64,000 nt of DNA from assembly GCA_977030845.1 (NCBI GenBank), contig OZ365110.1, forward strand, positions 42,904,001 through 42,968,000, read 5' to 3'. A program made the position numbers and the translations under genes. Every line of letters starts with the position of its first letter. Within the stretch, counting starts at the first letter, position 1. Positions 14,091-57,400 of this stretch are shown piece after piece. A model generated the notes under the pieces. The model ran no database searches, was not told where the DNA came from, and worked only from the letters and a program-made list of their open reading frames with translations. The stretch comes from Fimbriosthenelais zetlandica (taxonomy: Eukaryota).

Positions 14091-14570
14091 CCCAGAAACC
14101 ATCCACCCATGAAGCCAGCCAACCCAGAAGCCATCCACCCATGAAGCCAGCCAACCCAGAAAGCCACCCATCCATGAAGCCAGCCAGCCAACTAACCCAG
14201 AAAGCCACCCATCCATGAAGCCAGCCAGCCAACTAACCCAGAAAGCCACCCATCCATGAAGCCAGCCAGCCAACTAACCCAGAAAGCCACCCATCCATGA
14301 AGCCAACCAGCCAACTAACCCAGAAAGGCATCCACCATCCGCCCATGAAGCCAGCCCAGAATCCATCCAACCATGAAGCTAGCCCAGAAGCCATCCAGCC
14401 ATGACGCCAGCCAACCGGCTCACAAACCAGCCAGCTGAGAAGCCATCCACCAATTAAGCCAGCCAACCAGCTCACAAACCAGCCAGCAACTCAAATGCCA
14501 TTCACCAATTAAGCCAGCCAGCCAAGATGTCATCCATCCATGAAACCAATCAACCAACCAACCCAAAACC
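14091..14570 (+). repeat. C/A-rich minisatellite: two 32-bp units, then four 41-bp units (AACCCAGAAAGCCACCCATCCATGAAGCCAGCCAGCCAACT), then decaying copies
   Basis: 41-bp units start at 14153, 14194, 14235 and 14276 (next at 14317); this explains the repetitive W/G/L-rich ORFs on the minus strand. Confidence 0.95.
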
Positions 14571-17499: not shown

Positions 17500-17690
17500 C
17501 TGGACAATGGGCAACTGCTTGTATTATCGCTCAGAGATTTTTGGTATCTGGACAATGGGCAACTGCTTGTATTATCGCTCAGAGATTTCTGGTATCTGGA
17601 CAATGGGCAACTGCTTGTATTATCGCTCAGATATTTTTGGTATCTGGACAATAGGCAACTGCTTGTATTATCGCTCAGAGATTTCTGTAT
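17500..17690 (+). repeat. 48-bp minisatellite, 4 copies (CTGGACAATGGGCAACTGCTTGTATTATCGCTCAGAGATTTTTGGTAT)
   Basis: Units start at 17500, 17548, 17596 and 17644 and are nearly identical. Confidence 0.97.
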
Positions 17691-43030: not shown

Positions 43031-43612
43031 TTAAATCCTGTTTGAATCCTTAAAACTTTTAAGGTTCATACCGAAAGTGAGGGGACATCCCCCCCCCCTC
43101 CCCAACAAGGGTCAGGGTAATTAAATGGGAATAATGAAATCCCTTACAGATATACTGATAGTTCAATACTAATCTTGCAATCGTACTGCTATTTTTGGAG
43201 GTATTACTTTTTATACAAGCAATGTTTTTACAATTTAGTCACTCACTCCTAGATGATTAATCTCATATATTTGATACTATTTCTTTCAGTTTTTATGCAC
43301 GCCCATCAGTTGAGCCGACCCCATTTCGTCGTTTAAATATGCAAGCTGTCAAAAATCAAAACTAATTATTTCTTCTCATGATTGTTCTGCAGCCATATGA
43401 CAGCATCTGCTTTCTTATCTACCGAGCGAACACCAGACAACCTATTGAAGCAACGGATTGAAAGGTCTCATGCCATGCCATGCCCAGCCTCGCGGTGCCT
43501 CGATCGTTGTTAAAACAATATTATCAACCGTTTCTTTCAGCATCCGTTTTAAACTAACCTACTTCTCATAAAAATCGTACCTCTTCACTCCCATCTCCAA
43601 TTCATTTGCCCC

Positions 43613-44178
43613 CATGTCATACACACCATTCTATCTCACCATAGCACATTCAACTTGTAACAATTAACCATTTTTTCAGGTGATTTAGTCCACTACTGTG
43701 GCCCTCGCCCTCCCTCTAGTGTTGAAGTGAGGAGTTTGGGAGGCATGGCGGTGTTTACAAAGCAGACAAGTATACACAAGGTCAAGGTGATCTATAATGA
43801 TATTTACGAAGACGGGTCTCTTCCCAAGGTGAGTGTGTTTCCCTTATTTACTACTGTTAAAATTAATGTGCTTGTGTGGCCATTTATGTGATGGTTTGGA
43901 TGATGGAGAGCGTAGGAGTCCAGTCACTATTACACAGTGGATCGTGATTTGTTTATCACAGGTCATGTCAAATACCCGTTGACAGTGATTGTCTCACATC
44001 TTCTCCATGATGTGAGCTTGGAGTCTCTGTTCTCGATTTCAAGCAGCCACAGGCCCATCAATCTGAAACGCAAATTGAAAATAATACTGAATAAATACAT
44101 AATATATTATATATTGTGAGAATCGAGGCAAGCACTACCCACACCGTCCAGATTTTCAATGGGTTATTATTCCTAGAA
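43613..44178 (-). repeat. Linker L, inverted, internally deleted and more diverged copy (L0)
   Basis: 43613-~44065 is the reverse complement of ~46725-47255, and ~44110-44178 is the reverse complement of ~46329-46395. Confidence 0.85.
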
Positions 44179-45110
44179 TACCTGGAAAATGCATCCATTT
44201 AACTCTCAATTCTCAAACATTTCCTTGTGTACCCTCATCCCTTGAAATCCCTGCATTATTTTATCTATTTTTACAGGTGCTGCGAGTTTGTATAACGTCC
44301 GATATGGTAATGGTTCCTCCTCTTCGATCCATGGCTGTATCGGGATCCACTGACATACACTATGCATTGTTTACAAGACGGCTGACCACCACCACGCACG
44401 GCCACTGACCAGCAGATATACCTATCGTCTACCTCCTCCTACTCCTTCTACTCACCTTTACAAAGAAGTCTTTCTTTCCTGACTGGATACTAAAGCTGGC
44501 AAAGTAATCAAAGCCTGAGATATAGCCTCCGTAATCCCGCGGTATTCATCTTGTATGTCCAAATGGTCAAGATTCAATAAAAACAATAAAGCTACATTTG
44601 TCCCATGATTCATTGCGCAGCCGGGCGCTCACCTACTTCCGGCTCTCACGACTGAAATAAAGCTAAACATGAAATAGAGGAGGGTGTCATTTTTCGTCGG
44701 ACAAGGACGTGAACAATCTGTGTCACGACTCTGATTTCTTAAATCGTTAATATCTCGGCAACCACTGGGTCTTGATTCAAAATGAAAAATGAAAAATCTT
44801 AGTTGGGAAAGTCTCTAAAGGGTGGTATAGGTTACAAGTGCTAAAAGTGCTTCTAAAAATTTCGAATTTCAAAATGTACCCAATTTTCACACCGAGCTCA
44901 GATCGCATACTCAGTCTCACTAGTTCCTCAAATTGCCGTCCCACTCCGAGTGGCGCCCTAGTCGATGGAGGCCGATGTCCATGGGACAAGCCAGCCGGGT
45001 GGGAAAGGCAAGCTAGCTCCCATATCCCCCGCCTCTGAGGCGCCCCAAGCGGAAAACCAGAGTATTAGGCGTATTATAATAATACATGGATTAAGACCAT
45101 TCAATGTGTG
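44179..45110 (-). repeat. Arm A, reverse copy 1
   Basis: Starts TACCTGGAAAATGC; reverse complement of the forward arms throughout. Confidence 0.9.
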
Positions 45111-45206
45111 GAGACGGAACGCCCAGCCCATGATCGAGGCCTCGTATGGTAAGTTATGGGCAATGGCCACTGAGGGTGCCACTTTCGTAGTTACCCAGTT
45201 CCACTA

Positions 45207-45493
45207 GGAGCTAGCTTGGTAGGCCTACGGACGTCCGCCCTTGGCTTTCCTACCCGGCTGGCTTGTACCATGAGCATCGGCCACCAACGACGAGGGCGCC
45301 ACTTTCACGGTAATTTGTGTAACGAGTGAGGTAGAGTGTGCGATCCGAGCTCGGTGTAATAATTGGCCATATTTTGAAATTCGAAATTTCTACAAGCACA
45401 GGCCTATAATTATGGTCGAGGCCTTGTATGGTTAGTTATGGGAATGACCACTGAGGGCGCCACTTCCATAGCTACTCCGTTCTTCCAGATCTG
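45207..45493 (+). repeat. Extra truncated, diverged arm start (45207-45399) plus a second spacer S (~45412-45493)
   Basis: GGAGCTAGCTTGG...GCGATCCGAGCTCGGTGT...TTTTGAAATTCGAAATTT, then a return to GAGGCCTTGTATGGTTAGTTATGGG...GAGGGCGCCAC. Confidence 0.85.
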
Positions 45494-46328
45494 CGGGAGC
45501 TAGCTTGGTCCACTGGCTTGTACCATAGGGGCATCAGCCATCACCGACTAGGGCGCCACTCGGAGTCGGACGGCAATTTGAGGAACTAGTGAGTCTGAGT
45601 ATGCGATCCGAGCTCGGTGTGAAAATTGGGTACATTTTGAAATTCGGAATTTTTAGAAGCACTTTTAGCACTTGTAACCTATACCACCCTTTAGGTACTT
45701 TCCCAACTAAGATTTTTCATTTTGAATTTTGAATAAAAACCCAGTGGTTGCCGAGATATTAACGATTTAAGAAATCAGAGTCGTGACACAGATTGTTCAC
45801 GTCCTTGTCCGACGAGAAATGACACCCTCCTCTATTTCATGTTTAGCTTGATTTCAGTCGTGAGAGCCGGAAGTAGGTGAGCGCCCAGCTGCGCAATGAA
45901 TCATGGGACAAATGTAGCTTTATTGTTTTTATTGAATCTTGACCATTTGGACATACAAGATGAATACCGCGGGATTCCGGAGGCTATATCTCAGGCTTTG
46001 ATTACTTTGCCAGCTTTAGTATCCAGCCAGGAAGGAAAGACTTCTTCGTAAAGGTGAGTAGAAGGAGTAGGAGGAGGTAGACGATAGGTATATCTGCTGG
46101 TCAGTGGCCGTGCGTGGTGGTGGTCAGCCGTCTTGTAAATGCATAGTGTATGTCAGTGGGTCTGGATACAGCCATGGATCTAGAGGTGAAACCATTACCA
46201 TATCTTGGACATTATACAAAGTTGCAGCACCTGGAAAAATAGATAAAATAATTCTGGGATTTCAAGGGATGAGTGTGCACAAGAAAATGTTTGAAAATTG
46301 GGAGTTAAATGTGTGTATTTTCCAGGTA
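45494..46328 (+). repeat. Arm A, forward copy 2
   Basis: Runs from CGGGAGCTAGCTTGG to TTTTCCAGGTA. Confidence 0.9.
45867..45917. promoter_or_regulatory. ETS-like site plus ZNF143/Staf(SBS)-like site, present in all six arms (44591-44642, 45867-45917, 47976-48027, 48975-49016, 51051-51102, 52043-52084)
   Basis: CCGGAAGT (GCGGAAGT in two copies) lies ~17 bp from TCCCATGATTCATTGCG, which is close to the SBS consensus TCCCA-NN-ATGCAYYGCG and is preceded by GCTACA. Motif match only; binding is not shown. Confidence 0.5.
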
Positions 46329-46729
46329 TTCTAGAAATAATAACTCATCGATAATCTGGAGGGTGTGGTTAATTTTGCCTCTACTCTCACAATATACTCT
46401 ACACATGTATTTAGTAACTTATTGAGATTTGCTCTGAATTTCTAGGGATCCTAACACCATGAAGGCATGGGAAGCATTTGGTAGAGTTGGGGAGTCGGCT
46501 CAGAATGGCACTGTAGTTAACGCTATAGTGCCTATACTGACAGGTAACCTATATGTGTATATAAAACCTTCTAGTCAGCTTAATGATTGAAACGCAAATT
46601 GAAGATATATAGGCCTAATAGTTTGTTTTAATTACTTAACACCAAATCAAAAATAGACAATTTATTCATTATTTTACCATGTCGTTTTGCTTTTCTTTTT
46701 ATAATTTTTTTTATAATTTTTTTCTACAG

Positions 46730-46809
46730 ATTGATGTGTCAGTGGCTGCTGAAAATCGAGGACAGAGACTCCTAACTCACATCATAGAGAAAATGCGAGA
46801 CAATCACAG
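46730..46809 (+). other. Candidate 80-nt exon in L, plus strand (IDVSVAAENRGQRLLTHIIEKMRDNH); second copy 49782-49861
   Basis: Strong acceptor TTTTTTTCTACAG| and weak donor CAG|GTATTT. Open in phase 0 in L1 and L2; the acceptor is deleted in L3; in-frame stop in L0. Confidence 0.3.
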
Positions 46810-46993
46810 GTATTTGACATGACCAGTAATACACAAATCACGATCTCTTGTGTTGATGGACAAGGCCGGACTAATGTTAACAACATGTGGCATGGTGACT
46901 GGACTCCTACGCTCTCCATCATCCAACCCATCACATAAATGGCCACACAAGCACATTAATTTTAACAGTAGTGAATAAGGGAAACACACTCAC

Positions 46994-47182
46994 CTTAGGA
47001 AGAGACCCGTCTTGGTAAATATCCTTAGATCACCTGTGACCTTGTGTACACATGCCAGCATTGTACACACCGCCGTGCCTCCCACACTCCTCACTTCAAC
47101 ACTAGAGGGAGGGTGAGGGCCGCAGTAGCAGACTAAATCACCATTGGTCATTCTCTCAGCGTTTCCATGGTGTTGGAAAATC
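46994..47182 (-). other. Candidate 189-nt exon in L, minus strand (IFQHHGNAERMTNGDLVCYCGPHPPSSVEVRSVGGTAVCTMLACVHKVTGDLRIFTKTGLFL); copies 50046-50234 (-), 53105-53298 (-, 194 nt), 43680-43828 (+, 149 nt)
   Basis: Acceptor ACCATTTTTTCAG| and donor AAG|GTGAGT are conserved in all four copies. Open and a multiple of 3 in two copies; length-altered in the other two. Confidence 0.4.
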
Positions 47183-47585
47183 CTGAAAAAATGGTTAATT
47201 AATTGTAACAAATTGAATGTGCCATGTTGAGATATAGAATGGTGTGTATGACATGTTGCGCTCCTATTGCGTCGGATATAAAATCGGATTAATGTGTTCC
47301 AGGCTTTAGGCCTATGTGTTACAGTAGAATCTGATAGCCAGCCGATAGCCAGCATATGTATAACATTGTGATGGGGGTAGTGTGTGAGACATAAATGATG
47401 AAAAGAACTCAAGTTCGAACTAAGGACTGTGGTCAGTATTGTGTACTCTATACGTACAAGGCCGTCCCTTGTCCATGTGCATACATGTACGTGTGTATAT
47501 ATATTGAAGTCTGTAGGCAAATACAAAAGACTGAATGTGATGAGAAATAATAATATGTCCGGAAAAAACTGAAGCTTAATTGATA

Positions 47586-48436
47586 TACCTGGAAAATGCA
47601 TCCAGTTAACTCTCAATTTTCAAACATTTCCTTGTGTACCCTCATCCCTTAATTGTTTTATCTATTTTTCCAGGTGCTGCGACTTTGCATAATGTCCAAG
47701 ATATGGTAATGGTTCCAGCTCTTCGATCCATGGCTGTATCGGGATCCACTGGCATACACTATGCATTGTTTACAAGACGGCTGACCACCACCACGCACGG
47801 CCACTGACCTGCAGATATACCTACCACCTACCTCCTCCTACTCACCTTTAGTAGAAGTTTCTCCTTCCTGACTTCCAAAGCTGGCAAAGTAATCAAAGCC
47901 TGTGATATAGCCTCCTTAATCCCGCGGTATTCATCTTGTATGTTCAAGTGGAAGAGATTCAATAAAAACAATAAAGCTACATTTGTCCCATGATTCATTG
48001 CGCAGCTGGGCGCTCACCTACTTCCGGCTCTCACGACTGAAATCAAGCTAAACATGAAATAGAGGAGGGTGTCATTTTTCGTCGGACAAGGACGTGCACA
48101 ATCTGTGTCACGACTCTGATTTCTTAAATCGTTAATATCTCGGCAACCACTGGGTCTTTATTCAAAATTCAAAATGAAAAGTCTTAGTTGGGAAAGTCTC
48201 TAAAGGGTGGTATAGGTTGGAAGTGCTAAAAGTGCTTCTAAAGATTTCGAATTTCAAAATGTACCCAATTTTCACACCGAGCTCAGATCGCATACTCAGT
48301 TTCACTAGTTCCTCAAATTGCCGCCCGACTCCGAGTGGCGCCCTAGTCGGTGGTGGTCAATGCCCATGGTACAAGCCAGCCGGATGGGAAAGCCTAGCTA
48401 GCTCCCGTATCCCCCGCCTTTGAGGCGCCGCAAGCG
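47586..48436 (-). repeat. Arm A, reverse copy 2
   Basis: Starts TACCTGGAAAATGC and ends GGCGCCGCAAGCG. Confidence 0.9.
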
Positions 48437-48526
48437 AAGCCTCGTATGGTAAGTTATGGGCAATGACCACTGAGGGCGCCACTTTCATAGCTACTCCGTT
48501 CTGCCTGATCCTATTATGTTAGGACG
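48437..48526 (+). repeat. Spacer S at the palindrome centre (homologues at ~45111-45206, ~45412-45493, ~51565-51645)
   Basis: GCCTCGTATGGTAAGTTATGGGCAATGACCACTGAGGGCGCCACTTTC, in the same orientation in all copies. Confidence 0.85.
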
Positions 48527-49435
48527 CACATTGAATGGTCTTATTAATATAATACACCTACACTCCGCTTGTGGCGCCTGAGAGCCGTGGGATACGGGAG
48601 CTAGCTTGGCTTTCCCACCCGGCTGGCTTGTACCATGGACATCGGCCACCACCGACTATGGCGCCACTCGGAGTCGGACGGCAATTTGAGGAACTAATGG
48701 GTCTGAATATGCGATCCGAGCTCGGTGTGAAAATTGGGTACATTTTGAAATTCGAAATCTTTAGAAGCACTTTTAGCACTTCCAACCTATACCACCCTTT
48801 AGAGACTTTTCCAACTAAGATTTTTCATTTTTCATTTTGAATAAAGACCCAGTGGTTGCCGAGATATTAACGATTTAAGAAATCAGAGTCGTGACACAGA
48901 TTGTTCACGTCCTTGTCCGACGAGAAATGACACCCTCCTCTATTTCATGTTTAGCTTTATTTCAGTCGTGAGAGGCGGAAGTAGGTGAGCGCCCAGCTGC
49001 GCAATGAATCATGGGACAAATGAAGCTTTATTGCTTTTATTGAATCTTGACCACTTGAACATACAAGATGAATGCCGCAGGATAACGGAGGCTATATCAC
49101 AGGCTTTGATTACTTTGCCAGCTTTGGAAATCAGGAAGGAGAAACTTCTACTAAAGGTGAGTAGAAGGAGTAGGAGGAGGTAGACGATAGGTATATCTGC
49201 TGGTCAGTGGCCGTGCGTGGTGGTGGTCAGCCGTCTTGTAAACAATGCATAGTGTATGTCAGTGGGGCCCGATACAGCCATGGATCGAAGAGGTGGAACC
49301 AATACCATATCTTGGACATTATACAAAGTCGCAGCACCTGGAAAAATAGATAAAATAATTCAGGGATTTCAAGGGATGAGTGTGCACAAGAAAATGTTTG
49401 AAAATTGGGAGTTAAATGTGTGTATTTTCCAGGTA
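48527..49435 (+). repeat. Arm A, forward copy 3
   Basis: Runs from CACATTGAATGGTC to TTTTCCAGGTA. Confidence 0.9.
49004..49156 (+). other. Candidate exon in arm A ending in AAG|GTGAGT; 51 open codons MNHGTNEALLLLLNLDHLNIQDECRRITEAISQALITLPALEIRKEKLLLK in this copy
   Basis: The donor is intact in all six arms (exon ends 44456-, 46053+, 47846-, 49156+, 50915-, 52224+). The frame from this ATG is open to the donor in the short-form copies 49004-49156 and 52072-52224, but hits TAA 2 nt before the donor in 45896-46051. The ATG lies inside the SBS-like motif, so coding status is doubtful. Confidence 0.3.
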
Positions 49436-50635
49436 TTCTAGAAATAATAACTCATCGATAATCTGGAGGGTGTGTTTATTTTTGCCTCTAATCTCACAAT
49501 ATACTCTACACATGTTTTTAGTAACTTATTGAGATTTGCTCTGAATTTCTAGTGATCCTAACTCCATGAAGGCATGGGAAGCATTTGGTAGAGTGGGGGA
49601 GTCGGCTCAGAATGGCACTTTAGTTAACGCTATAGTGCCTATACTGACAGGTAACCTATACGTGTATATAAAACCTTCTAGTCAGCTTAATGATTGAAAC
49701 GCAAATTGACAATAGACAATTTATTCATGATTTTACCATGTCGTTTTGCTTTTCTAAGTGATTTTTATGCTTTTTCTACAGATTGATATGTCTGTGGCTG
49801 CTGAAAATCGAGGACAGAGACTCCTAACTCACATCATAGAGAAAATGCGAGACAATCACGGGTATTTGAGATGACCAGTAATACACAAATCACGATCTCT
49901 TGTGTTGATGGACAAGGCCGGACTAAAGAAAACAACATGTGGCATAGTGACTGGACTCCTACGCTCCCCATCATCCAAACCATCACATAAATTGCCACAC
50001 AAGCACATTGATTTTAACAGTAGTAAATAAGAGAAACACACTCACCTTAGGAAGAGACCCGTCTTGGTAAATATCCTTAGATCACCTGTGATCTTGTGTA
50101 CACATGCCAGCATTGTAAACACCGCCGTGCCTCCCACACTCCTCACTTCAACACCAGAGGGAGGGAGGGGGCCGCAGTAGCGGACGAAATCACCATTGGT
50201 CATTCTCTCAGCGTTTCCACGGTGTTGGAAAATCCTGAAAAAATGGTTAATTAATTTTTACAAATTGAATGTGCCATGTTGAGATATAGCATGGTGTGTA
50301 TGACATGTTGCGCTCCTATTGCGCCGGATATAAAATCGGATTAATGTGTTCCAGGCTTTAGGCCTATGTGATACAGTAGAATCTGATAGCCAGCCGATAG
50401 CCGACATGTGTATAACATTGTGATGGGGGTAGTGTGTGAGACATAAATGATTAAAAGAACTCAAGTTCGGACTACGGACTGTGGTCAGTATTGTGTACTC
50501 TATACGTACAAGGCCGTCCCTTGTCCATGTGCATACATGTACGTGTGTATATAATGAAGTCTGTAGGCAAATACAAAAGACTGAATGTGATGAGAAATAA
50601 TAATATGTCCAGAAAACACTGAAGCTTATTTGATA
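49436..50635 (+). repeat. Linker L, copy 2 (1200 bp)
   Basis: Collinear with the other L copies, with small deletions. Confidence 0.9.
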
Positions 50636-51564
50636 TACCTGGAAAATGCATCCAGTTAACTCTCAATTTTCAAACATTTCCTTGTGCACACTCATCCCTT
50701 GAAATCCCTGAATTATTTTATCTATTTTTCCAGGTGCTGCGAATTTGTATAATGTCCAAGATATGGTAATGGTTCCACCTCTTCGATCCATGGCTGTATC
50801 GGGATCCACTGGCATACACTATGCATTGTTTACAAGACGGCTGACCACCACCACACACGGCCACTGACCAGCAGATATACCTACCACCTACCTCCTCCTA
50901 CTCCTTCTACTCACCTTTACAAAGAAGTTTCTTCTTCCTGGCTGGATACTAAAGCTGGCAAAGTAATCAAAGCCTGAGATATAGCCTCCGTAATCCCGCG
51001 GTATTCATCTTGTATGTCGAAATGGTCAAGATTCAATAAAAAACAATAAAGCTACATTTGTCCCATGATTCATTGCGCAGCTGGGCGCTCACCTACTTCC
51101 GGCTCTCACGACTGAAATCAAGCTAAACATGAAATAGAGGAGGGTGTCATTTCTCGTCGGACAAGGACGTGCACAATCTGTGTCACGACTCTGATTTCTT
51201 AAATCGTTAATATCTCAGCAACCACTGGGTCTTTATTCAAAATGAAAAATGAAAAATCTTAGTTGGGAAAGTCTCTAAAGGGTGGTATAGGTGAGAAGTG
51301 CTAAAAGTGCTTCTAAAAATTTCGAATTTCAAAATGTACCCAATTTTCACACCGAGCTCAGATCGCATACTCAGTCTCACTAGTTCCTCAAATTGCCGCC
51401 CGACTCCGAGTGGCGCCCTAGTCGGTGGTGGTCAATGCCCATGGTACAAGCCAGCCGGATGGGAAAACCAAGCTAGCTCCCGTATCCCCCGCCTTTGAGG
51501 CGCCCCAAGCGGAAAACCCGAGTATTAGGCGTAATATAATAATTCATGGATTAAGACCATTCAA
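50636..51564 (-). repeat. Arm A, reverse copy 3
   Basis: Starts TACCTGGAAAATGC and ends GACCATTCAA. Confidence 0.9.
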
Positions 51565-51645
51565 GCCCATGATCGAGGCCTCGTATGGTAAGTTATGGGC
51601 AATGACCACTGAGGGCGTCACTTTCGTAGTTACCCCGTTCTGCTA

Positions 51646-52503
51646 GGAGCTAGCTTGGTACGGACGTCCGCTCTTGGCTTTCCTACCCGGCTGGCTTGTA
51701 CCATGGGCATTGACCACCATCGACTAGGGCGCCACTCGGAGTCGGGCGGCAATTTGAGGAACTAGTGAGTCTGAGTATGCGATCCGAGCTCGGTGTGAAA
51801 ATTGGGTACATTTTGAAATTCGAAATTTTTAGAAGCACTTTTAGCACTTGTAACCTATACCACCCTTTAGAGACTTTCCCAACTAAGATTTTTCATTTTT
51901 CATTTTGAATAAAGACCCAGTGGTTGCCGATATATTAACGATTTAAGAAATCAGAGTCGTGACACGGATTGTGCACGTCCTTGTCCGACGAAAAATGACA
52001 CCCTCCTCTATTTCATGTTTAGCTTTATTTCAGTCGTGAGAGGCGGAAGTAGGTGAGCGCCCGGCTGCGCAATGAATCATGGGACAGATGTAGCTTCATT
52101 GCTTTTATTGAATCTTGACCACTTGAACATACAAGATGAATGCCGCAGGATAACGGAGGCTATATCACAGGCTTTGATTACTTTGCCAGCTTTGGAAGTC
52201 AGGAAGGAGAAATGTCTACTAAAGGTGAGTAGAAGGAGTAGGAGGAGGTAGACGATAGGTATATCTGGTGGTCAGTGGCCGTGCGTGGTGGTGGTCAGCC
52301 ATCTTGTAAACAATGCATAGTGTATGCCAGTGGGTCCCGATACAGCCATGGATCGAAGAGGTGGAACCATTACCATATCTTGGACATTATACAAAGTCGC
52401 GGCACCTGGAAAAATAGATAAAATAATTCAGGGATTTCAAGGAATGAGTGTGCAAAAGGAAATGTTTGAAAATTGGGAGTTAAATGTGTGTATTTTCCAG
52501 GTA
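51646..52503 (+). repeat. Arm A, forward copy 4
   Basis: Runs from GGAGCTAGCTTGG to TTTTCCAGGTA. Confidence 0.9.
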
Positions 52504-53687
52504 TTCTAGAAATAATAACTCCTCGATAATCTGGAGGGTGTGTTTATTTTTGCCTCTATTCTATATTCTACACATGTTTTTAGTAACTTATTGAGATTTG
52601 CTATGAATTTTTAGGGATCCTAACTCTATGAAGGCATGGGAAGCATTTGGTAGAGTGGGGGAGTCGGCTCAGAATGGCACTGTAGTTAACGCTATAGTGC
52701 CTATACTGAGAGGTAACCTATACATGTATATAAACCTTTTAGTCAGCTTAATGATTTGAAACGCAGATTGAGGATATATAATAGTTTGTTTTAATTACTT
52801 TATACCAAATCAACAATAGACAATTTATTCATGATTTCACCATGTCGTTTTGCTTTTCTTAGTGATTTTTTATATAAGACTCCTAACTCACATCATAGAG
52901 AAAATGCGAGACAATCACGGGTATTTGAAATGACCAGTAATACACAAATGACGATCTCTTGTGTTGATGGACAAGGCCGGACTAATGAAAACAACATGTG
53001 GCATAGTGACTGGACTCCTACGCTCTCCATCATCCAAATCATCACATAAATGGCCACACAAGCACATTAATTTTAACAGTAGTTAATAAGAGAAACACAC
53101 TCACCTTGGGAAGAGACCCGTCTTGGTAAATATCCTTAGTTCACATGTGACCTTGTGTAGGCTACACATGCCTGCACTGTAAACACCACAACGCCTCCTA
53201 CACTCCTCACTTCAACACCAGAGGGAGGGAGGGGGCCGCAGTAGCTGACTAAATCACCATTGGTCATAATATCAGCGTTTCCACTCTGTTGCAAAATCCT
53301 GAAAAAATGGTTAATTAATTGTTACAAATTGAATGTGCCATGTTGAGATATAGAATGGTGTGTATGACATGTTGCGCTCCCGTAGGCCTTTATCATAATT
53401 AGACCTATGTGTAACAGTAGCCTCTGATAGCCAGCAGATAGCCAACAACTGTATAACATTCATGTGAAGAGGGTAGTGTGTGAGCCATAAATGATGAAAA
53501 GCACTCAGGCTCGGCCCAAGGACTGTGGTTAGTATTGTGTACTCTATACGTACAGGGCCGTCCCTTGTCCATGTGCATACATGTACGTGCGAATATATCA
53601 TGAAGTCTGTAAGCAAATACAAAAGATAGATCGACTGAATGTGATGAGAAATAATAATATGACTAAAACACTGAAGCTTAATTGATA
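52504..53687 (+). repeat. Linker L, copy 3; ends in unique sequence instead of a reverse arm
   Basis: Ends ...AAGCTTAATTGATA then TTCACATAC, whereas L1 and L2 continue ...TTGATA then TACCTGG. Confidence 0.9.
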
Positions 53688-53804
53688 TTCACATACATGT
53701 AAGTGTAATTCCTGGGTGGGCCCGTTAATAGGCATGGATCTGCCCTTCCTGAGGCAGACCTACTGACCCTCAGATAACAAAATATTATTTAGAGTATGTC
53801 TTAC

Positions 53805-53925
53805 CTTGTCTATATATGCACTTGTAAAATGTGTACGGACTTCTTGTATAGACATTAAACCACCATTTATTCATTCTTGCATGTAAAAGATCAGGAACAG
53901 TTGATTCGGGTGTAACATGAGTTGG
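53805..53925 (-). other. Candidate 121-nt exon just right of the array (PTHVTPESTVPDLLHARMNKWWFNVYTRSPYTFYKCIYRQ)
   Basis: Acceptor TTCTAATTTTATTTTCCAG| and donor CAAG|GTAAGA; open in one of three frames; no recognisable homology. Confidence 0.35.
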
Positions 53926-54200
53926 CTGGAAAATAAAATTAGAAACGTGAATAAATTTCACTGTATTTTCTCAGATTTTTACATATTCAAAACTTAATTT
54001 ACATATGCTACAGATCTGAAGCCTACCTACTCACTACATTATATTTAATAACATTAGATTTTTGTAGCTACTTCTTACGAAACCCTTCTTTGGCTCTACA
54101 GAGTAGGCAAGGTTAATTAGGTGCATGGTTTTAAGAACATACAAACAAAGGGTACAAACAAAATTTAAAAAATGTAGGCATATGCCCGGGGGCATGAATT

Positions 54201-54430
54201 TAGACGAGTCTGATATCCCAATATATTCCCTATAGTAGACGAGTTTGATATCCCAATACATTCCCTATAGTAGACGAGTCGGATATGCCAATACATTCCC
54301 TATAGTAGACGAGTGTGATATCCCAATACATTCTCTATAGTAGACGAATATGATATCCCAATATATTCTCTAAGTAAACGAGTCTGATATCCCAAACATT
54401 CTGAAAAGTAGACGAGTCTTATATCTCATA
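54201..54430 (+). repeat. 35-bp minisatellite, ~6.5 copies (TAGACGAGTCTGATATCCCAATACATTCCCTATAG)
   Basis: Units start at 54201, 54236, 54271, 54306, 54341, 54375 and 54409, decaying to the right. Confidence 0.95.
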
Positions 54431-57400
54431 GCGTTAGTTTAAGATTGAACGATCGCTTATATTATAATTCACATCAGCAAGTAGAAAATCTCGCTGGACT
54501 TGTTCTCTTTACACAATCATCCTGGGTATTATAAATCAATCATTTGATTGGAAGCCATTCAAGAGCCGAGTGTTTCATCATTCGTCTGAATAAAAAGACA
54601 GCCCTGAAATTCCATATCAAAGACCCAAACCTATGATTAAAATAAAAGCTTTTTGATCTCTCCGAAGCTTGTAAGGCACATTTTCGCCATTTATTCAAAT
54701 GAAATATCTCTCCGCGATGATGTTTTAAAAAAATGATCCATTTCCATTACCATTCTGTGCGCAGAATTGCTTCTTTAAGACATTGTAAAAATCTCGGCCA
54801 ACTCGAGCAAAATGTTTTCCTTACTGACTTTTTAGATGCTTGTTTTTTTCTGTTATCTTATTAATTCCATTATTTAGTGCAGCTATTGCAGTCTCTGCCT
54901 GATTGGACTCCTGTCTTCATCAGACTCGCCTCTCCTATGATAATAATATTGACTTCTTCCTAATCGCTGCTATTGCCTTGCGTCCCTATATTCCTAAAAG
55001 GCATTTTCAATCTAAAGTATGTCACTATCTTTGATCATGACTGGACTGAATAGGGAATTGAAAGCAAAATGGCAGCCAGTCTACCTAGCACGATTGATCT
55101 TCGATGCTCGTCTAGTGTCTTTTCCAAAAAGGATCGAAGGGGACCCTCTCCTAATTGCATCAGCAAAGATACTATCGTCCTTGACAACCGCTTGATTAGT
55201 ATCGTCATTGGAGAGATCTATGGGCCTAGAGAACCACCGGCTTTTTCCGATAAAAATGAACGCTTCGCGTGATGACTCTGCCCTTATCTCCCCCAGATTT
55301 CATTCTATGTCTTATCCCCAAGAATGCTGATAAATTTAATAGACTGATAAAACGGGCACGCGCTTCTTTGGCGCTTAGTCGGCGGTGTCTTGTAGGAATG
55401 GCAAGGTGTCAGAATCCATTTATTCAGATATAGGCACCAATAGCCCCACTCTCAATCCCTCCATTATACAGTATAGACTCGGGATTACGCTTAGATTTGT
55501 ATCATGGTGTCTTTGATGTTTTTCCTCCTTCTTGGAAAATGAACCCACCCCATTGTTATTGTAATGGAAAGATTGAATAATAGAGCATCGTTTATATAGT
55601 TTATCTCAGTGTAAAATGGGGGGAGATTATAAAGTTCAAAAGCAGAGGCGTCTTAAAAAATAATCTTTTGATATCAGTTGCGTGTTTAATTAACATCGTG
55701 TGGTTAAAAATGGCACATTGTTAAATACTGTACATCATTAAATACTGAAAATGATGCAAAATGAAATCTATACCCTCTGCCTCAACACAGTTTAAATTTC
55801 ATATTTTTAAATTCATGGTTTAAGCCAACAAATTCACCATACGAATCAATGCATTAATCCCATTATACTATACTCAATTCCCTCTTGGTGGGCGAGTTCT
55901 CCTTTTTTCATATAGTGGCGATCATTGTCAGTTTTGATCTCCTGTTTTGTCACTCAAGAGATAGAAAAATTCACTTTGTAGGCTACCTATAGACACCCTA
56001 GAGTGAGCAGCCATGTCTGAAAGGCAATGGCAAGAGACTTGGATAAGATGAAGAGGTTTTATACCATGGGTGCCTGGCTCATTAGTGGCATGCCCATCAT
56101 TGTAATTAAAGGTAGGAAACCTTTTTATCCATTTTTTTAAATGTAAAACTGACATCCTTTCTCTGCCAGGGCTCTGTTCCATTAAGGTCAAACAGTTTGT
56201 CAGACTCCTTCCTACCAATAACCTAGACTCCATAACTCAAAGGTTCAATGACTCTTCAACGAGAGAGAAGAATTTAAGAAGAGTTAAACCAAATTCAAAT
56301 GGGAATTTTAGAGTTGTATTAAAGATGGATTGGAGTATATATATAGGAAGAGAGGAAGCCACAGGGACTGTGGAATGAAGCCACTACTATACCACTACCA
56401 CCCACCACTCGGCCATTCGGTTATCATCTTTCGTGTTTCCCCCAGTGGAACTAGTCACCCCAACGCCCTTCACATAGCGACTCCTCCATTCGCCCTGCCA
56501 ACCCCACACTCCACTCTGTCGTGTCACGTTTATCAGGTTTTCCGAACTGGTGAACATAACACAAAAAGGGGAAGCAAAATTCAGATGAGGATGTGTATGG
56601 GACGATGGTGCGTTGATCGGGCAAACCAAGTGAGAGAGCGGCGGAAGTATTCCATGTCAGCTTCTATTGGAGACATGGAATGTTGGAGGCGTTATTGCCC
56701 TGCCGTCTATGGAATACATGGATCATCCCAGGCTCCATTATGTCAGGGGATGTCCTCACGTATTCTCTCCTCTTGTTCCAATTAGTTTCTCTGTACCAAT
56801 TTAAAGAAAAAAGTTTATCACGTTGGGAGACAGATTTGGGCTACCACCATATAAGTAATGTTGCAGTATAAATCAATCAATGCTCCCAGCAACTACATAA
56901 TTAATTAACTTATATTTTCTTAGGCAAAGGTGGGTATATATAAATAAATTTATTTAATTTACTCCCTTAATATGGGTATAATTTACTCCCTTATATGGGT
57001 ATGTCAATACATTATAGGCCTATACAGTGAAACCATAATAATTGTTTGTTACATGCTGCAGTCTGTCTCATTGATTACTTTTGAATTACGTGCTAACTTT
57101 TTCCACATTTCTTATGCATAATTCCGATGCATGTATACAAGTGACATGCTGTATGGACTTCATTATATTGAAATGAGTAACTGCTGGCGCGATATTCAGC
57201 AGAAAAAAGTCTTTGACCTTTGAGCACAAGATGTCATTGGTATTGCTGATGGAAGCGGAGAGCAACGCCATGTCTCCCAATTAAAAGGTCGTGACCAAAA
57301 CAGGAGGAGGAATCATACCATGCAATGTGATCAGGAAATTTCAATAATTTGCCAGAGTGGGGTGAAAAAAAGTAGGTGGGGGCTATGCAGGGAAGGTCAT

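What the first reader, a model, noticed from the sequence alone, without database searches (positions are those of the whole stretch)
43613..53687. 10-kb tandem array of nested palindromes built from a promoter/exon-bearing arm
Seen: six ~0.9-kb arms in strictly alternating orientation, separated alternately by a ~90-bp spacer S (tight palindromes with ~0.85-kb stems) and a ~1.2-kb linker L, giving a 3.1-kb period. No transposase, TSD or simple satellite monomer explains it, and the arms carry promoter-like motifs and splice donors. Inference: an inverted duplication of a transcribed locus later amplified in tandem. It could produce long fold-back RNA (endo-siRNA/hpRNA or piRNA source) or extrude cruciforms and be recombinationally unstable. 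An alternative is a tandem run of a Foldback-type or long-TIR DNA element (A-L-A).
Basis: partly seen in the sequence, partly recalled or inferred. Interest (0 to 1): 0.85.

Follow-up and report, generated by a model that had tools for sequence, protein, structure and literature searches.

The report
Tandemly tripled palindrome of promoter-like DNA
A 10-kb non-coding stretch of this invertebrate genome is a mirror-image duplication of a promoter-like segment that was later copied three times head-to-tail; it is real and its history can be read, but nothing shows that it makes RNA, so it is a moderately interesting structural repeat.

Summary
There are six 855-944-bp arms in alternating orientation, three ~1.15-kb linkers all in the same orientation, and an array spanning 43613-53688. 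Two details need correcting. The spacers are 459, 123 and 159 bp, not ~90 bp. The period is 3.4 kb for the first unit and 3.06 kb for the later ones.

The history can be read from the sequence. A palindrome formed first (43613 to about 47255). A 3.07-kb segment was then duplicated twice in direct tandem through one junction, found at both 47584|47585 and 50634|50635, with 2-bp microhomology. The copies differ by 4-12%, so this is not an assembly artefact.

Partner arms (92.9% identical) are no more alike than non-partner inverted arms (92.4%), so the arms are not being homogenised against each other.

No coding capacity, Rfam family, tRNA, transposase or second copy was found in the window. 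Protein and metagenome searches found no relatives.

All six arms keep an identical ZNF143/Staf-like plus ETS-like cassette and a strong splice donor. The ~1-kb core between the paired cassettes has escaped CpG decay, while the outer arms and linkers have not. This fits outward-firing promoter pairs that are unmethylated in the germline.

No sequencing run was listed, so transcription, hairpin RNA and small RNAs are untested.

Verdict: a new member of a known kind (palindromic segmental duplication amplified in tandem). Two other notes from this scan cover the same stretch.

The parts
43613..44109 (.). [quoted passage not shown] It is an inverted copy of linker part b (46727-47255) and lacks ~250-300 bp of linker part a.
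44110..45053 (-). Arm A1, with the putative promoter pointing left. SBS-like site 44601-44617, ETS-like block 44624-44642, donor 44448-44459.
45054..45512 (.). Spacer S1 (459 bp). It contains an extra, ~80% diverged copy of the right part of the spacer plus the inner arm (about 45125-45405).
45513..46396 (+). Arm A2, with the putative promoter pointing right. SBS-like site 45892-45908, donor 46050-46061.
46397..47584 (+). Linker L1. It has three parts: a (about 46397-46726), b (46727-47255, shared with the left flank, holding two convergent exon-like pieces) and c (47256-47584, outside the ancestral palindrome).
47585..48439 (-). Arm A3, truncated at the tandem-duplication junction 47584|47585. 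SBS-like site 47986-48002, donor 47838-47849.
48440..48562 (.). Spacer S2 (123 bp)
48563..49503 (+). Arm A4. ETS-like block 48975-48993, SBS-like site 49000-49016, donor 49153-49164.
49504..50634 (+). Linker L2. Exon-like piece P lies on + (49781-49868). Exon-like piece M lies on - (about 50240 to 50046, with an ATG at 50203).
50635..51513 (-). Arm A5, truncated at the same junction as A3 (50634|50635). SBS-like site 51061-51077, donor 50907-50918.
51514..51672 (.). Spacer S3 (159 bp)
51673..52562 (+). Arm A6. SBS-like site 52068-52084, donor 52221-52232.
52563..53688 (+). Linker L3, the edge copy and the most diverged (87.5-87.8% to L1 and L2 in parts b-c). Piece P has lost its 5' half and piece M carries a 5-bp insertion.

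Best explanation
This is a single-locus, non-coding segmental repeat made in two steps.

Step 1 (shown). A segment of about 1.5-1.8 kb, carrying a CpG-rich promoter-like core, was duplicated in inverted orientation. The result was a palindrome running from 43613 to about 47255, with its centre in S1.

Step 2 (shown). A 3.07-kb piece was duplicated twice in direct tandem. The piece ran from inside the left arm to 330 bp beyond the right arm. Both duplications used one junction with 2-bp AT microhomology, which points to end-joining or replication slippage followed by unequal crossing-over. The product is three units, each ordered arm, spacer, arm, linker.

Since then the copies have diverged by 4-12%. 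There are patchy exchanges between units, rearranged palindrome centres, and no homogenisation between partner arms.

Inferred. Each palindrome behaves as a symmetrical head-to-head pair of ZNF143/ETS-type promoters. They share a ~1-kb core that is unmethylated in the germline, and they fire outwards through a non-coding first-exon-like piece with a strong donor. Neighbouring promoters therefore face each other across each linker. Any read-through RNA would contain long inverted repeats. Whether such RNA is made, and whether it has any use, is not known. The default reading is a largely neutral structural duplication that multiplied a promoter.
For: Structure.

Order of events:
- A3 and A5 share the same truncation point and the same joined sequence (TTGATAT|ACCTGG). 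A1 reads TAGAAT|ACCTGG and the end of L3 reads TTGATAT|TCACAT.
- Seven sites separate all + arms from all - arms.
- Mean identity is 94.1% for same-orientation arms, 92.9% for partner arms and 92.4% for non-partner inverted arms.
- The linker has the same orientation in all three units.

Single locus and non-coding:
- No other copy in the remaining 54 kb.
- No credible Pfam family in 37 ORFs. The only hit was one weak, sub-threshold one, TMEM132_N at E = 0.027, 15 bits against a cut-off of 27.
- No Rfam family and no tRNA.
- No protein relatives of the linker or arm ORFs.

Promoter-like core:
- The 17-mer TCCCATGATTCATTGCG is identical in all six arms with 0 expected. It matches 15 of 18 positions of the ZNF143 SBS1 forms quoted in PMC3627581.
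- The adjacent CCGGAAGT block occurs six times, and so does the donor.
- CpG observed/expected is 0.85-1.09 at the palindrome centres, 0.49-0.63 in the linkers and 0.51 in the rest of the window.
- CpG columns vary in 5/40 cases in the inner arm, 12/26 in the outer arm (p = 0.004) and 22/64 in the linkers.
Against: - There is no RNA evidence of any kind. No sequencing run was listed, so promoter activity, direction and splicing are inferred from sequence alone.
- The SBS-like site has three mismatches to the vertebrate consensus. Whether this animal has a ZNF143 orthologue was not checked.
- Low variation in the inner arm could reflect more frequent exchange near the palindrome centres rather than constraint or hypomethylation. 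The six copies are not independent and the counts are small.
- Only 64 kb of the genome could be searched, so 'single locus' is not proven.
Confidence: 0.7

Rival explanations
1. The array is a functional hairpin-RNA, endo-siRNA or piRNA source. Transcripts that cross a palindrome, or converge in a linker, form long double-stranded RNA. That RNA is diced into small RNAs which silence a related gene or the locus itself.
For: - The arms would give stems of about 410-870 bp with ~93% pairing.
- Promoter-like cassettes sit inside every arm, and neighbouring ones converge across each linker.
- L1 has no canonical poly(A) signal on the + strand.
- Tandem clusters of hairpin-RNA loci are known in Drosophila: hp-CG4068 with 20 copies and the hp-tHMG cluster with 13 (PMC10317233).
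Against: - Partner arms are no more complementary than non-partner arms (92.9 vs 92.4%), and there are no partner-shared compensating changes.
- The cassettes point away from the tight hairpin if they fire outwards, as the CpG pattern suggests.
- No target gene or homologue was found.
- No RNA data exist here.
Confidence: 0.17
2. The ancestral palindrome (43613-47255) is a Foldback-like or long-terminal-inverted-repeat DNA element that inserted here. Only the later tripling was a local duplication.
For: - It has long inverted arms around a short centre and no coding capacity, as in non-autonomous foldback elements.
- The 8-9 bases outside its two ends are partly alike, TTTGCCCCC versus GTTGCGCTC, matching at 6 of 9 positions. 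This was read.
- An older, 80%-identical copy of the inner-arm segment sits in S1, so part of the arm has been copied more than once.
Against: - There is no second copy in 54 kb of flanking sequence.
- No relatives appeared in the protein or metagenome searches.
- The arms lack the internal subrepeats typical of Foldback elements.
- A flank match of 6/9 is weak for copies only ~7% diverged.
- The arms carry a housekeeping-type promoter cassette rather than transposon ends.
Confidence: 0.08
3. The repeat is an amplified 5' end of a real protein-coding gene family. The exon-like pieces P and M in the linker would be functional first coding exons.
For: - Both pieces have acceptor and donor motifs kept in most copies.
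- Piece M opens with ATG, is intact in L1 and L2, and gives weak matches to fibronectin type III repeat boundaries.
Against: - L1 and L2 differ at six of 52 residues of piece M, with mostly amino-acid-changing substitutions. L3 has a frameshift, and the left copy has lost the ATG.
- The ATG of piece P is absent in L1, and its 5' half is missing in L3.
- The fibronectin-like hits are to a fish protein and a metagenomic 'titin'. They owe their E-values to summing many weak repeats.
- No further exons of that kind occur in the window.
- There is no Pfam match.
Confidence: 0.04
4. The array is an assembly artefact, such as fold-back chimeric reads or haplotypes laid side by side.
For: Palindromes and tandem copies are typical products of chimeric long reads and of uncollapsed haplotypes. 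No reads could be examined.
Against: - The copies differ by 4-12% with many copy-specific indels. The three spacers differ in length (459, 123, 159 bp), and the edge copy is the most diverged.
- Fold-back artefacts give identical arms.
- Two haplotypes cannot give three units.
- The window has no gaps.
Confidence: 0.02

Closest known systems
Tandem hairpin-RNA clusters of Drosophila (hp-CG4068, hp-tHMG cluster; PMC10317233)
   Same: Both are local inverted duplications repeated head-to-tail, over a few to tens of kilobases, non-coding, and variable between copies.
   Different: The Drosophila loci are defined by Dicer-2-dependent small RNAs, by a primary transcript that crosses both arms, and by arms copied from a target gene's exons. 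Here none of that could be tested. The arms carry promoter-like DNA rather than exon fragments of a known target, and partner arms are only ~93% complementary.
Ampliconic palindromes of mammalian sex chromosomes
   Same: Both have long inverted arms around a short spacer and carry promoters or genes in mirror image.
   Different: From my own knowledge, not checked here: those arms are tens of kilobases to megabases long and are kept over 99.9% identical by arm-to-arm gene conversion. These arms are 0.9 kb, 92-93% identical, and show no homogenisation between partners.
Foldback / long-terminal-inverted-repeat DNA transposons
   Same: Both have long inverted arms, a short middle and no transposase.
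   Different: No dispersed copies, no clear target-site duplication and no subrepeat structure in the arms were found. The array grew by a single duplication junction that includes 330 bp of flanking DNA, not by insertion.
ZNF143/Staf-dependent bidirectional promoters (PMC3082894, PMC3627581)
   Same: Both have an SBS1-like 18-mer next to an ETS-type site at a CpG-rich core that separates two divergent starts less than about 1 kb apart.
   Different: Here the two sides are mirror copies of one promoter, not two different genes. The site has three mismatches to the vertebrate consensus. Binding and transcription are untested.
Inverted ladders made by breakage-fusion-bridge amplification
   Same: Both show repeated units with arms in alternating orientation.
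   Different: Breakage-fusion-bridge cycles invert every segment in turn. Here the linker has the same orientation in all three units, so the array is a direct tandem repeat of a unit that already held a palindrome.

Membership tests
Foldback / long-TIR DNA transposon | Multiple dispersed copies in the genome | tested here: inconclusive
   No copy in the other 54 kb of the window, and none in the metagenome or protein searches. The rest of the genome could not be searched.
Foldback / long-TIR DNA transposon | Target-site duplication flanking symmetrical termini | tested here: not met
   For A-L-A, the + arms of units 2 and 3 stop 70 bp short of the - arms at a shared breakpoint, and the flanks are the repeated spacers. 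For the ancestral palindrome, the flanks match at only 6/9 positions.
Foldback / long-TIR DNA transposon | Arms built of short tandem subrepeats (Foldback) or an encoded transposase (autonomous forms) | tested here: not met
   Tandem Repeats Finder finds no subrepeats in the arms. No credible Pfam family in any ORF of the array; the one hit is sub-threshold (TMEM132_N, E = 0.027).
Hairpin-RNA (hpRNA) locus | A primary transcript that spans both arms | not testable with these tools
   No sequencing run was listed, so read laying could not be used.
Hairpin-RNA (hpRNA) locus | Dicer-dependent small RNAs of about 21 nt from the stem | not testable with these tools
   No small-RNA data were available.
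Hairpin-RNA (hpRNA) locus | Arms homologous to a target gene | tested here: inconclusive
   No homologue of the arm or linker ORFs was found, but this genome's own genes could not be searched.
Gene-conversion-maintained ampliconic palindrome | Partner arms kept nearly identical (over 99%) | tested here: not met
   Partner arms are 92.4-93.5% identical, no higher than non-partner inverted arms at 91.4-93.6%.
Breakage-fusion-bridge inverted ladder | Every segment alternates in orientation | tested here: not met
   L1, L2 and L3 are all in direct orientation.
ZNF143/Staf-type promoter | 18-bp SBS1 motif close to a transcription start | tested here: inconclusive
   The site matches 15/18 positions of the SBS1 forms in PMC3627581. 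The transcription start is unknown.
ZNF143/Staf-type promoter | CpG-island-like, unmethylated context | tested here: met
   CpG observed/expected is 0.85-1.09 in the cores against 0.51 background. CpG columns are no more variable than other columns in the core (5/40 vs 25/310), but 3-4 times more variable outside it. Methylation itself was not measured.
Small-RNA gene array (snRNA, spliced-leader RNA, tRNA, miRNA) | Match to a curated RNA family or a tRNA fold | tested here: not met
   Rfam gave no hit at gathering scores or at E <= 1. ARAGORN found none.

The most novel reading that the evidence does not exclude
Each palindrome is a self-driven double-stranded-RNA generator in a non-arthropod invertebrate. 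The mirrored ZNF143/ETS promoters would fire in both directions. Inward transcripts would fold into ~410-bp hairpins, and outward transcripts from neighbouring units would collide in the linkers. The tripled array would then be a dedicated small-RNA source whose promoters are part of the stems.
Probability: 0.1. Interest if true: 0.65.

Novelty: new member of a known kind. Interest (0 to 1): 0.3.

Why it matters
Three things are of some value.
- It is a clean worked example of how a palindrome plus one microhomology junction can multiply a promoter six-fold. The order of events can be read from the sequence.
- It shows that long, closely spaced palindromes can persist in an animal genome for a long time, here to about 7% divergence, without arm-to-arm homogenisation, while their centres keep being rearranged.
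- If the six cassettes are active, the locus would be an untranslated source of convergent and fold-back transcripts, and so a candidate small-RNA locus in a group where few are described.

Without RNA data it remains a structural curiosity.

Tried and rejected
- RNA evidence. Two sequencing-run searches (53000-57000 and 48960-50260, any kind) listed no run, so read laying could not be used.
- Known RNA genes. Rfam at gathering scores on the whole window and at E <= 1 on 43500-50700 gave nothing. No tRNAs were found. I considered a spliced-leader or snRNA array because of the Staf-like site followed by a donor. I rejected it because there is no Rfam match, no Sm-site-like motif after the donor, and the 'exon' varies between copies.
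- Coding capacity. Pfam on 37 ORFs in and around the array gave nothing above threshold. The protein atlas gave only chance-level rows.
- Exon-like piece M. Searched against 1.84 billion representatives, it gave four weak hits to fibronectin type III repeat proteins (a gar 'fibronectin-like' protein and a metagenomic 'titin'). Their E-values come from summing many weak repeats. tblastn of those proteins back on the window found no further exons. I rejected this as chance or long-decayed similarity.
- Relatives of the ORFs. The search for homologous proteins on the 209-aa linker ORF and the 95-aa arm ORF gave no hits.
- Other copies. A sensitive blastn of one unit and S1 against the rest of the window found none. 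Exact-word scans of the metagenome collection with two invariant arm words gave 0 hits. That collection is not expected to hold this animal's DNA, so the blank means little.
- Bacterial promoter and terminator scan. It is irrelevant for an animal locus and I ignored it.
- Poly(A) signals in the linkers. They were not decisive.
- Earlier notes for neighbouring windows could not be reached.
Full report
OBSERVATION

The repeat finder and a blastn self-comparison confirm the described structure. There are six arms:
- A1 44110-45053
- A2 45513-46396
- A3 47585-48439
- A4 48563-49503
- A5 50635-51513
- A6 51673-52562

They alternate strictly in orientation and are 91.4-95.7% identical pairwise. Three linkers lie between the palindromes, all in the same orientation: L1 46397-47584, L2 49504-50634 and L3 52563-53688.

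Homology begins at 43613 and ends at 53688.

Three details need correction.
- The spacers are 459, 123 and 159 bp, not ~90 bp.
- The period is about 3.39-3.41 kb between units 1 and 2 and 3.05-3.08 kb between units 2 and 3.
- The leftmost palindrome is longer than the other two. 43613-44065 is an inverted copy of the middle of the linker (46727-47255), at 88-92% identity.

The window has no N runs. Its G+C content is 42% and its CpG observed/expected ratio is 0.51 outside the array. Earlier notes on the same genome describe an invertebrate animal.

HOW IT AROSE

In the alignment of the six arms, A1, A2, A4 and A6 run about 70 bp further outwards than A3 and A5. A3 and A5 stop at the same column and are joined to the same linker end, reading TTGATAT|ACCTGG at 47584|47585 and at 50634|50635. 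A1 reads TAGAAT|ACCTGG at the corresponding place. The last linker runs into unique DNA as TTGATAT|TCACAT at 53688.

So there is only one novel junction type. It is present twice and has 2 bp (AT) of microhomology. That is the signature of a direct tandem duplication of one 3.07-kb segment, followed by one more copy through unequal exchange.

The duplicated segment begins inside the left arm. It ends 330 bp beyond the right end of the palindrome, in part c of the linker (47256-47584), which has no counterpart on the left. Transposition therefore cannot have built the array.

Three observations place the inverted duplication before the tandem copies.
- Seven sites separate all left-pointing arms from all right-pointing arms.
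- Same-orientation arms of different units are the most alike, at a mean of 94.1%.
- Partner arms average 92.9% and non-partner inverted arms 92.4%.

Mixed patterns occur as well, for example A1+A2+A5 against the rest at six sites and A1+A2+A4 at five. These show patchy exchange between units.

The edge linker L3 is the most diverged, at 87.5-87.8%. This is usual for the outer copies of tandem arrays.

The left arm lacks about 250-300 bp of linker part a.

The palindrome centres differ between units. S1 holds an extra copy of the right part of the spacer plus the inner arm, about 80% identical. Unit 2 lacks a stretch present in units 1 and 3. Rearranged centres are what long palindromes are expected to accumulate. 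That expectation is from my own knowledge and was not tested here.

Because the linker never inverts, the array is not a breakage-fusion-bridge ladder.

NOT AN ARTEFACT, NOT CODING, NOT A KNOWN RNA OR TRANSPOSON

The copies differ by 4-12%, with copy-specific indels. That excludes fold-back read artefacts. Three units also cannot be explained by two haplotypes laid side by side.

No ORF in or around the array matches Pfam above threshold: 37 ORFs were tested. Rfam finds nothing even at E <= 1, and there are no tRNAs. The arms hold no subrepeats. No other copy lies in the remaining 54 kb.

Two exon-like pieces face each other in each linker.
- Piece P lies on the + strand, for example at 49781-49868.
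- Piece M lies on the - strand, about 50240 to 50046, with an ATG at 50203.

Both have splice-site-like edges. Neither shows coding constraint.
- The ATG of P is missing in L1, and its 5' half is missing in L3.
- M differs between L1 and L2 at six of 52 residues.
- M is frameshifted in L3 and has lost its ATG in the left copy.

The only database hits of M are weak matches to the boundaries of fibronectin type III repeats in a gar protein and a metagenomic 'titin'. Their E-values come from summing many weak stretches. I treat them as chance or as a long-decayed relic.

The linker and arm ORFs have no relatives among 5.8 billion predicted proteins.

THE PROMOTER-LIKE CORE

All six arms keep an identical 17-mer, TCCCATGATTCATTGCG, with 0 expected by chance. 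It agrees with 15 of the 18 positions of the ZNF143/Staf SBS1 sites quoted in PMC3627581. An ETS-type CCGGAAGT block lies 6 bp away. A strong donor, AAAG|GTGAGTAG, lies about 145 bp further out and is also kept in all six arms.

The 350 columns between the cassette and the palindrome centre vary half as often as the 440 columns outside it: 30 against 72 variable columns, p = 0.0013.

CpG observed/expected ratios are:
- 0.85-1.09 in 500-bp windows at the three centres
- 0.49-0.63 in the linkers
- 0.51 in the rest of the window

Variation at CpG columns compared with other columns:

| Region | CpG columns variable | Other columns variable | CpG vs other |
|---|---|---|---|
| Core (inner arm) | 5/40 | 25/310 | no excess |
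| Outer arm | 12/26 | 57/382 | p = 3e-4 |
| Linkers | 22/64 | 90/996 | p = 9e-8 |

Core against outer-arm CpG columns gives p = 0.004.

The ~1-kb cores between paired cassettes have therefore escaped the CpG decay that affects everything around them. These cores lie at about 44600-45910, 47985-49015 and 51060-52085. This is the behaviour of DNA that stays unmethylated in the germline.

In an invertebrate with gene-body methylation, the pattern fits promoters that fire outwards. The methylated, decaying side would be the transcribed side. This step is inference. The counts are small, the copies are not independent, and more frequent exchange near the centres could contribute.

WHAT IT MAY DO

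If the cassettes fire outwards, each palindrome is a mirror-image divergent promoter pair, and neighbouring promoters converge across each linker. The cassettes of A4 and A5 are 2.0 kb apart. L1 has no canonical poly(A) signal on the + strand.

Read-through would give RNA containing the next inverted repeat. A 991-nt piece around S2 folds at -799 kcal/mol, z = -57. If the cassettes also fire inwards, ~410-bp hairpins would result directly. A double-stranded-RNA source is therefore mechanistically possible. Tandem hairpin-RNA clusters are known in Drosophila (PMC10317233).

Three points speak against a selected hairpin.
- Partner arms are no more complementary than non-partners.
- No compensating, partner-shared changes stand out. 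Only two sites are shared for A1/A2, two for A3/A4 and none for A5/A6.
- No target gene was found.

No sequencing run was listed for either query. Transcription, splicing and small RNAs are therefore untested, not absent.

COMPARISON AND VERDICT

The locus works like a palindromic segmental duplication amplified in tandem.
- It fails the tests for a Foldback or long-TIR transposon in the array itself.
- It fails the test for a gene-conversion-maintained palindrome.
- It fails the test for a breakage-fusion-bridge ladder.
- Membership of the hairpin-RNA class cannot be tested here.

I rate it a new member of a known kind, with modest interest (0.3). The structural history is well supported. The promoter reading is moderately supported by sequence evolution. 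Any RNA function is open.

Two sibling notes from this scan cover the same stretch.
- s1-196196 reports the six ZNF143/ETS-like cassettes, and my tests agree.
- s1-196172 reports arm-to-arm gene conversion in palindrome 2. My identity matrix does not support this as more than a possible short tract at arm columns 205-229.

Noticed in passing
window 54201-54425: A 35-bp minisatellite of 6.5 copies with 88% matches lies about 500 bp to the right of the array. It is unrelated in sequence to the array.
   Followed up: no
window 14091-14524: A C/A-rich block of overlapping tandem repeats with periods 16, 28, 32, 41 and 52. On the minus strand it reads as an open 85-aa W/G/L-rich frame. It is probably a minisatellite rather than a gene.
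   Followed up: no
window 17500-17684: A 48-bp tandem repeat of 3.9 copies with 96% matches. It is open in several frames on both strands.
   Followed up: no
window 45125-45405: An extra copy of the right half of the spacer plus about 170 bp of the inner arm sits inside S1. It is only ~80% identical to the six arms, so it is more diverged than the palindrome itself. It shares a variant stretch with the inner edge of A6. Its age and origin are unexplained: it could be an older duplicate, or an insertion of a small mobile element.
   Followed up: partly
window 1-64000: No ORF of 70 aa or more that was tested matches a protein family above threshold, and no RNA gene was found in the whole 64 kb. 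The array sits in a long gene-poor or intronic stretch with a CpG observed/expected ratio of about 0.5.
   Followed up: partly
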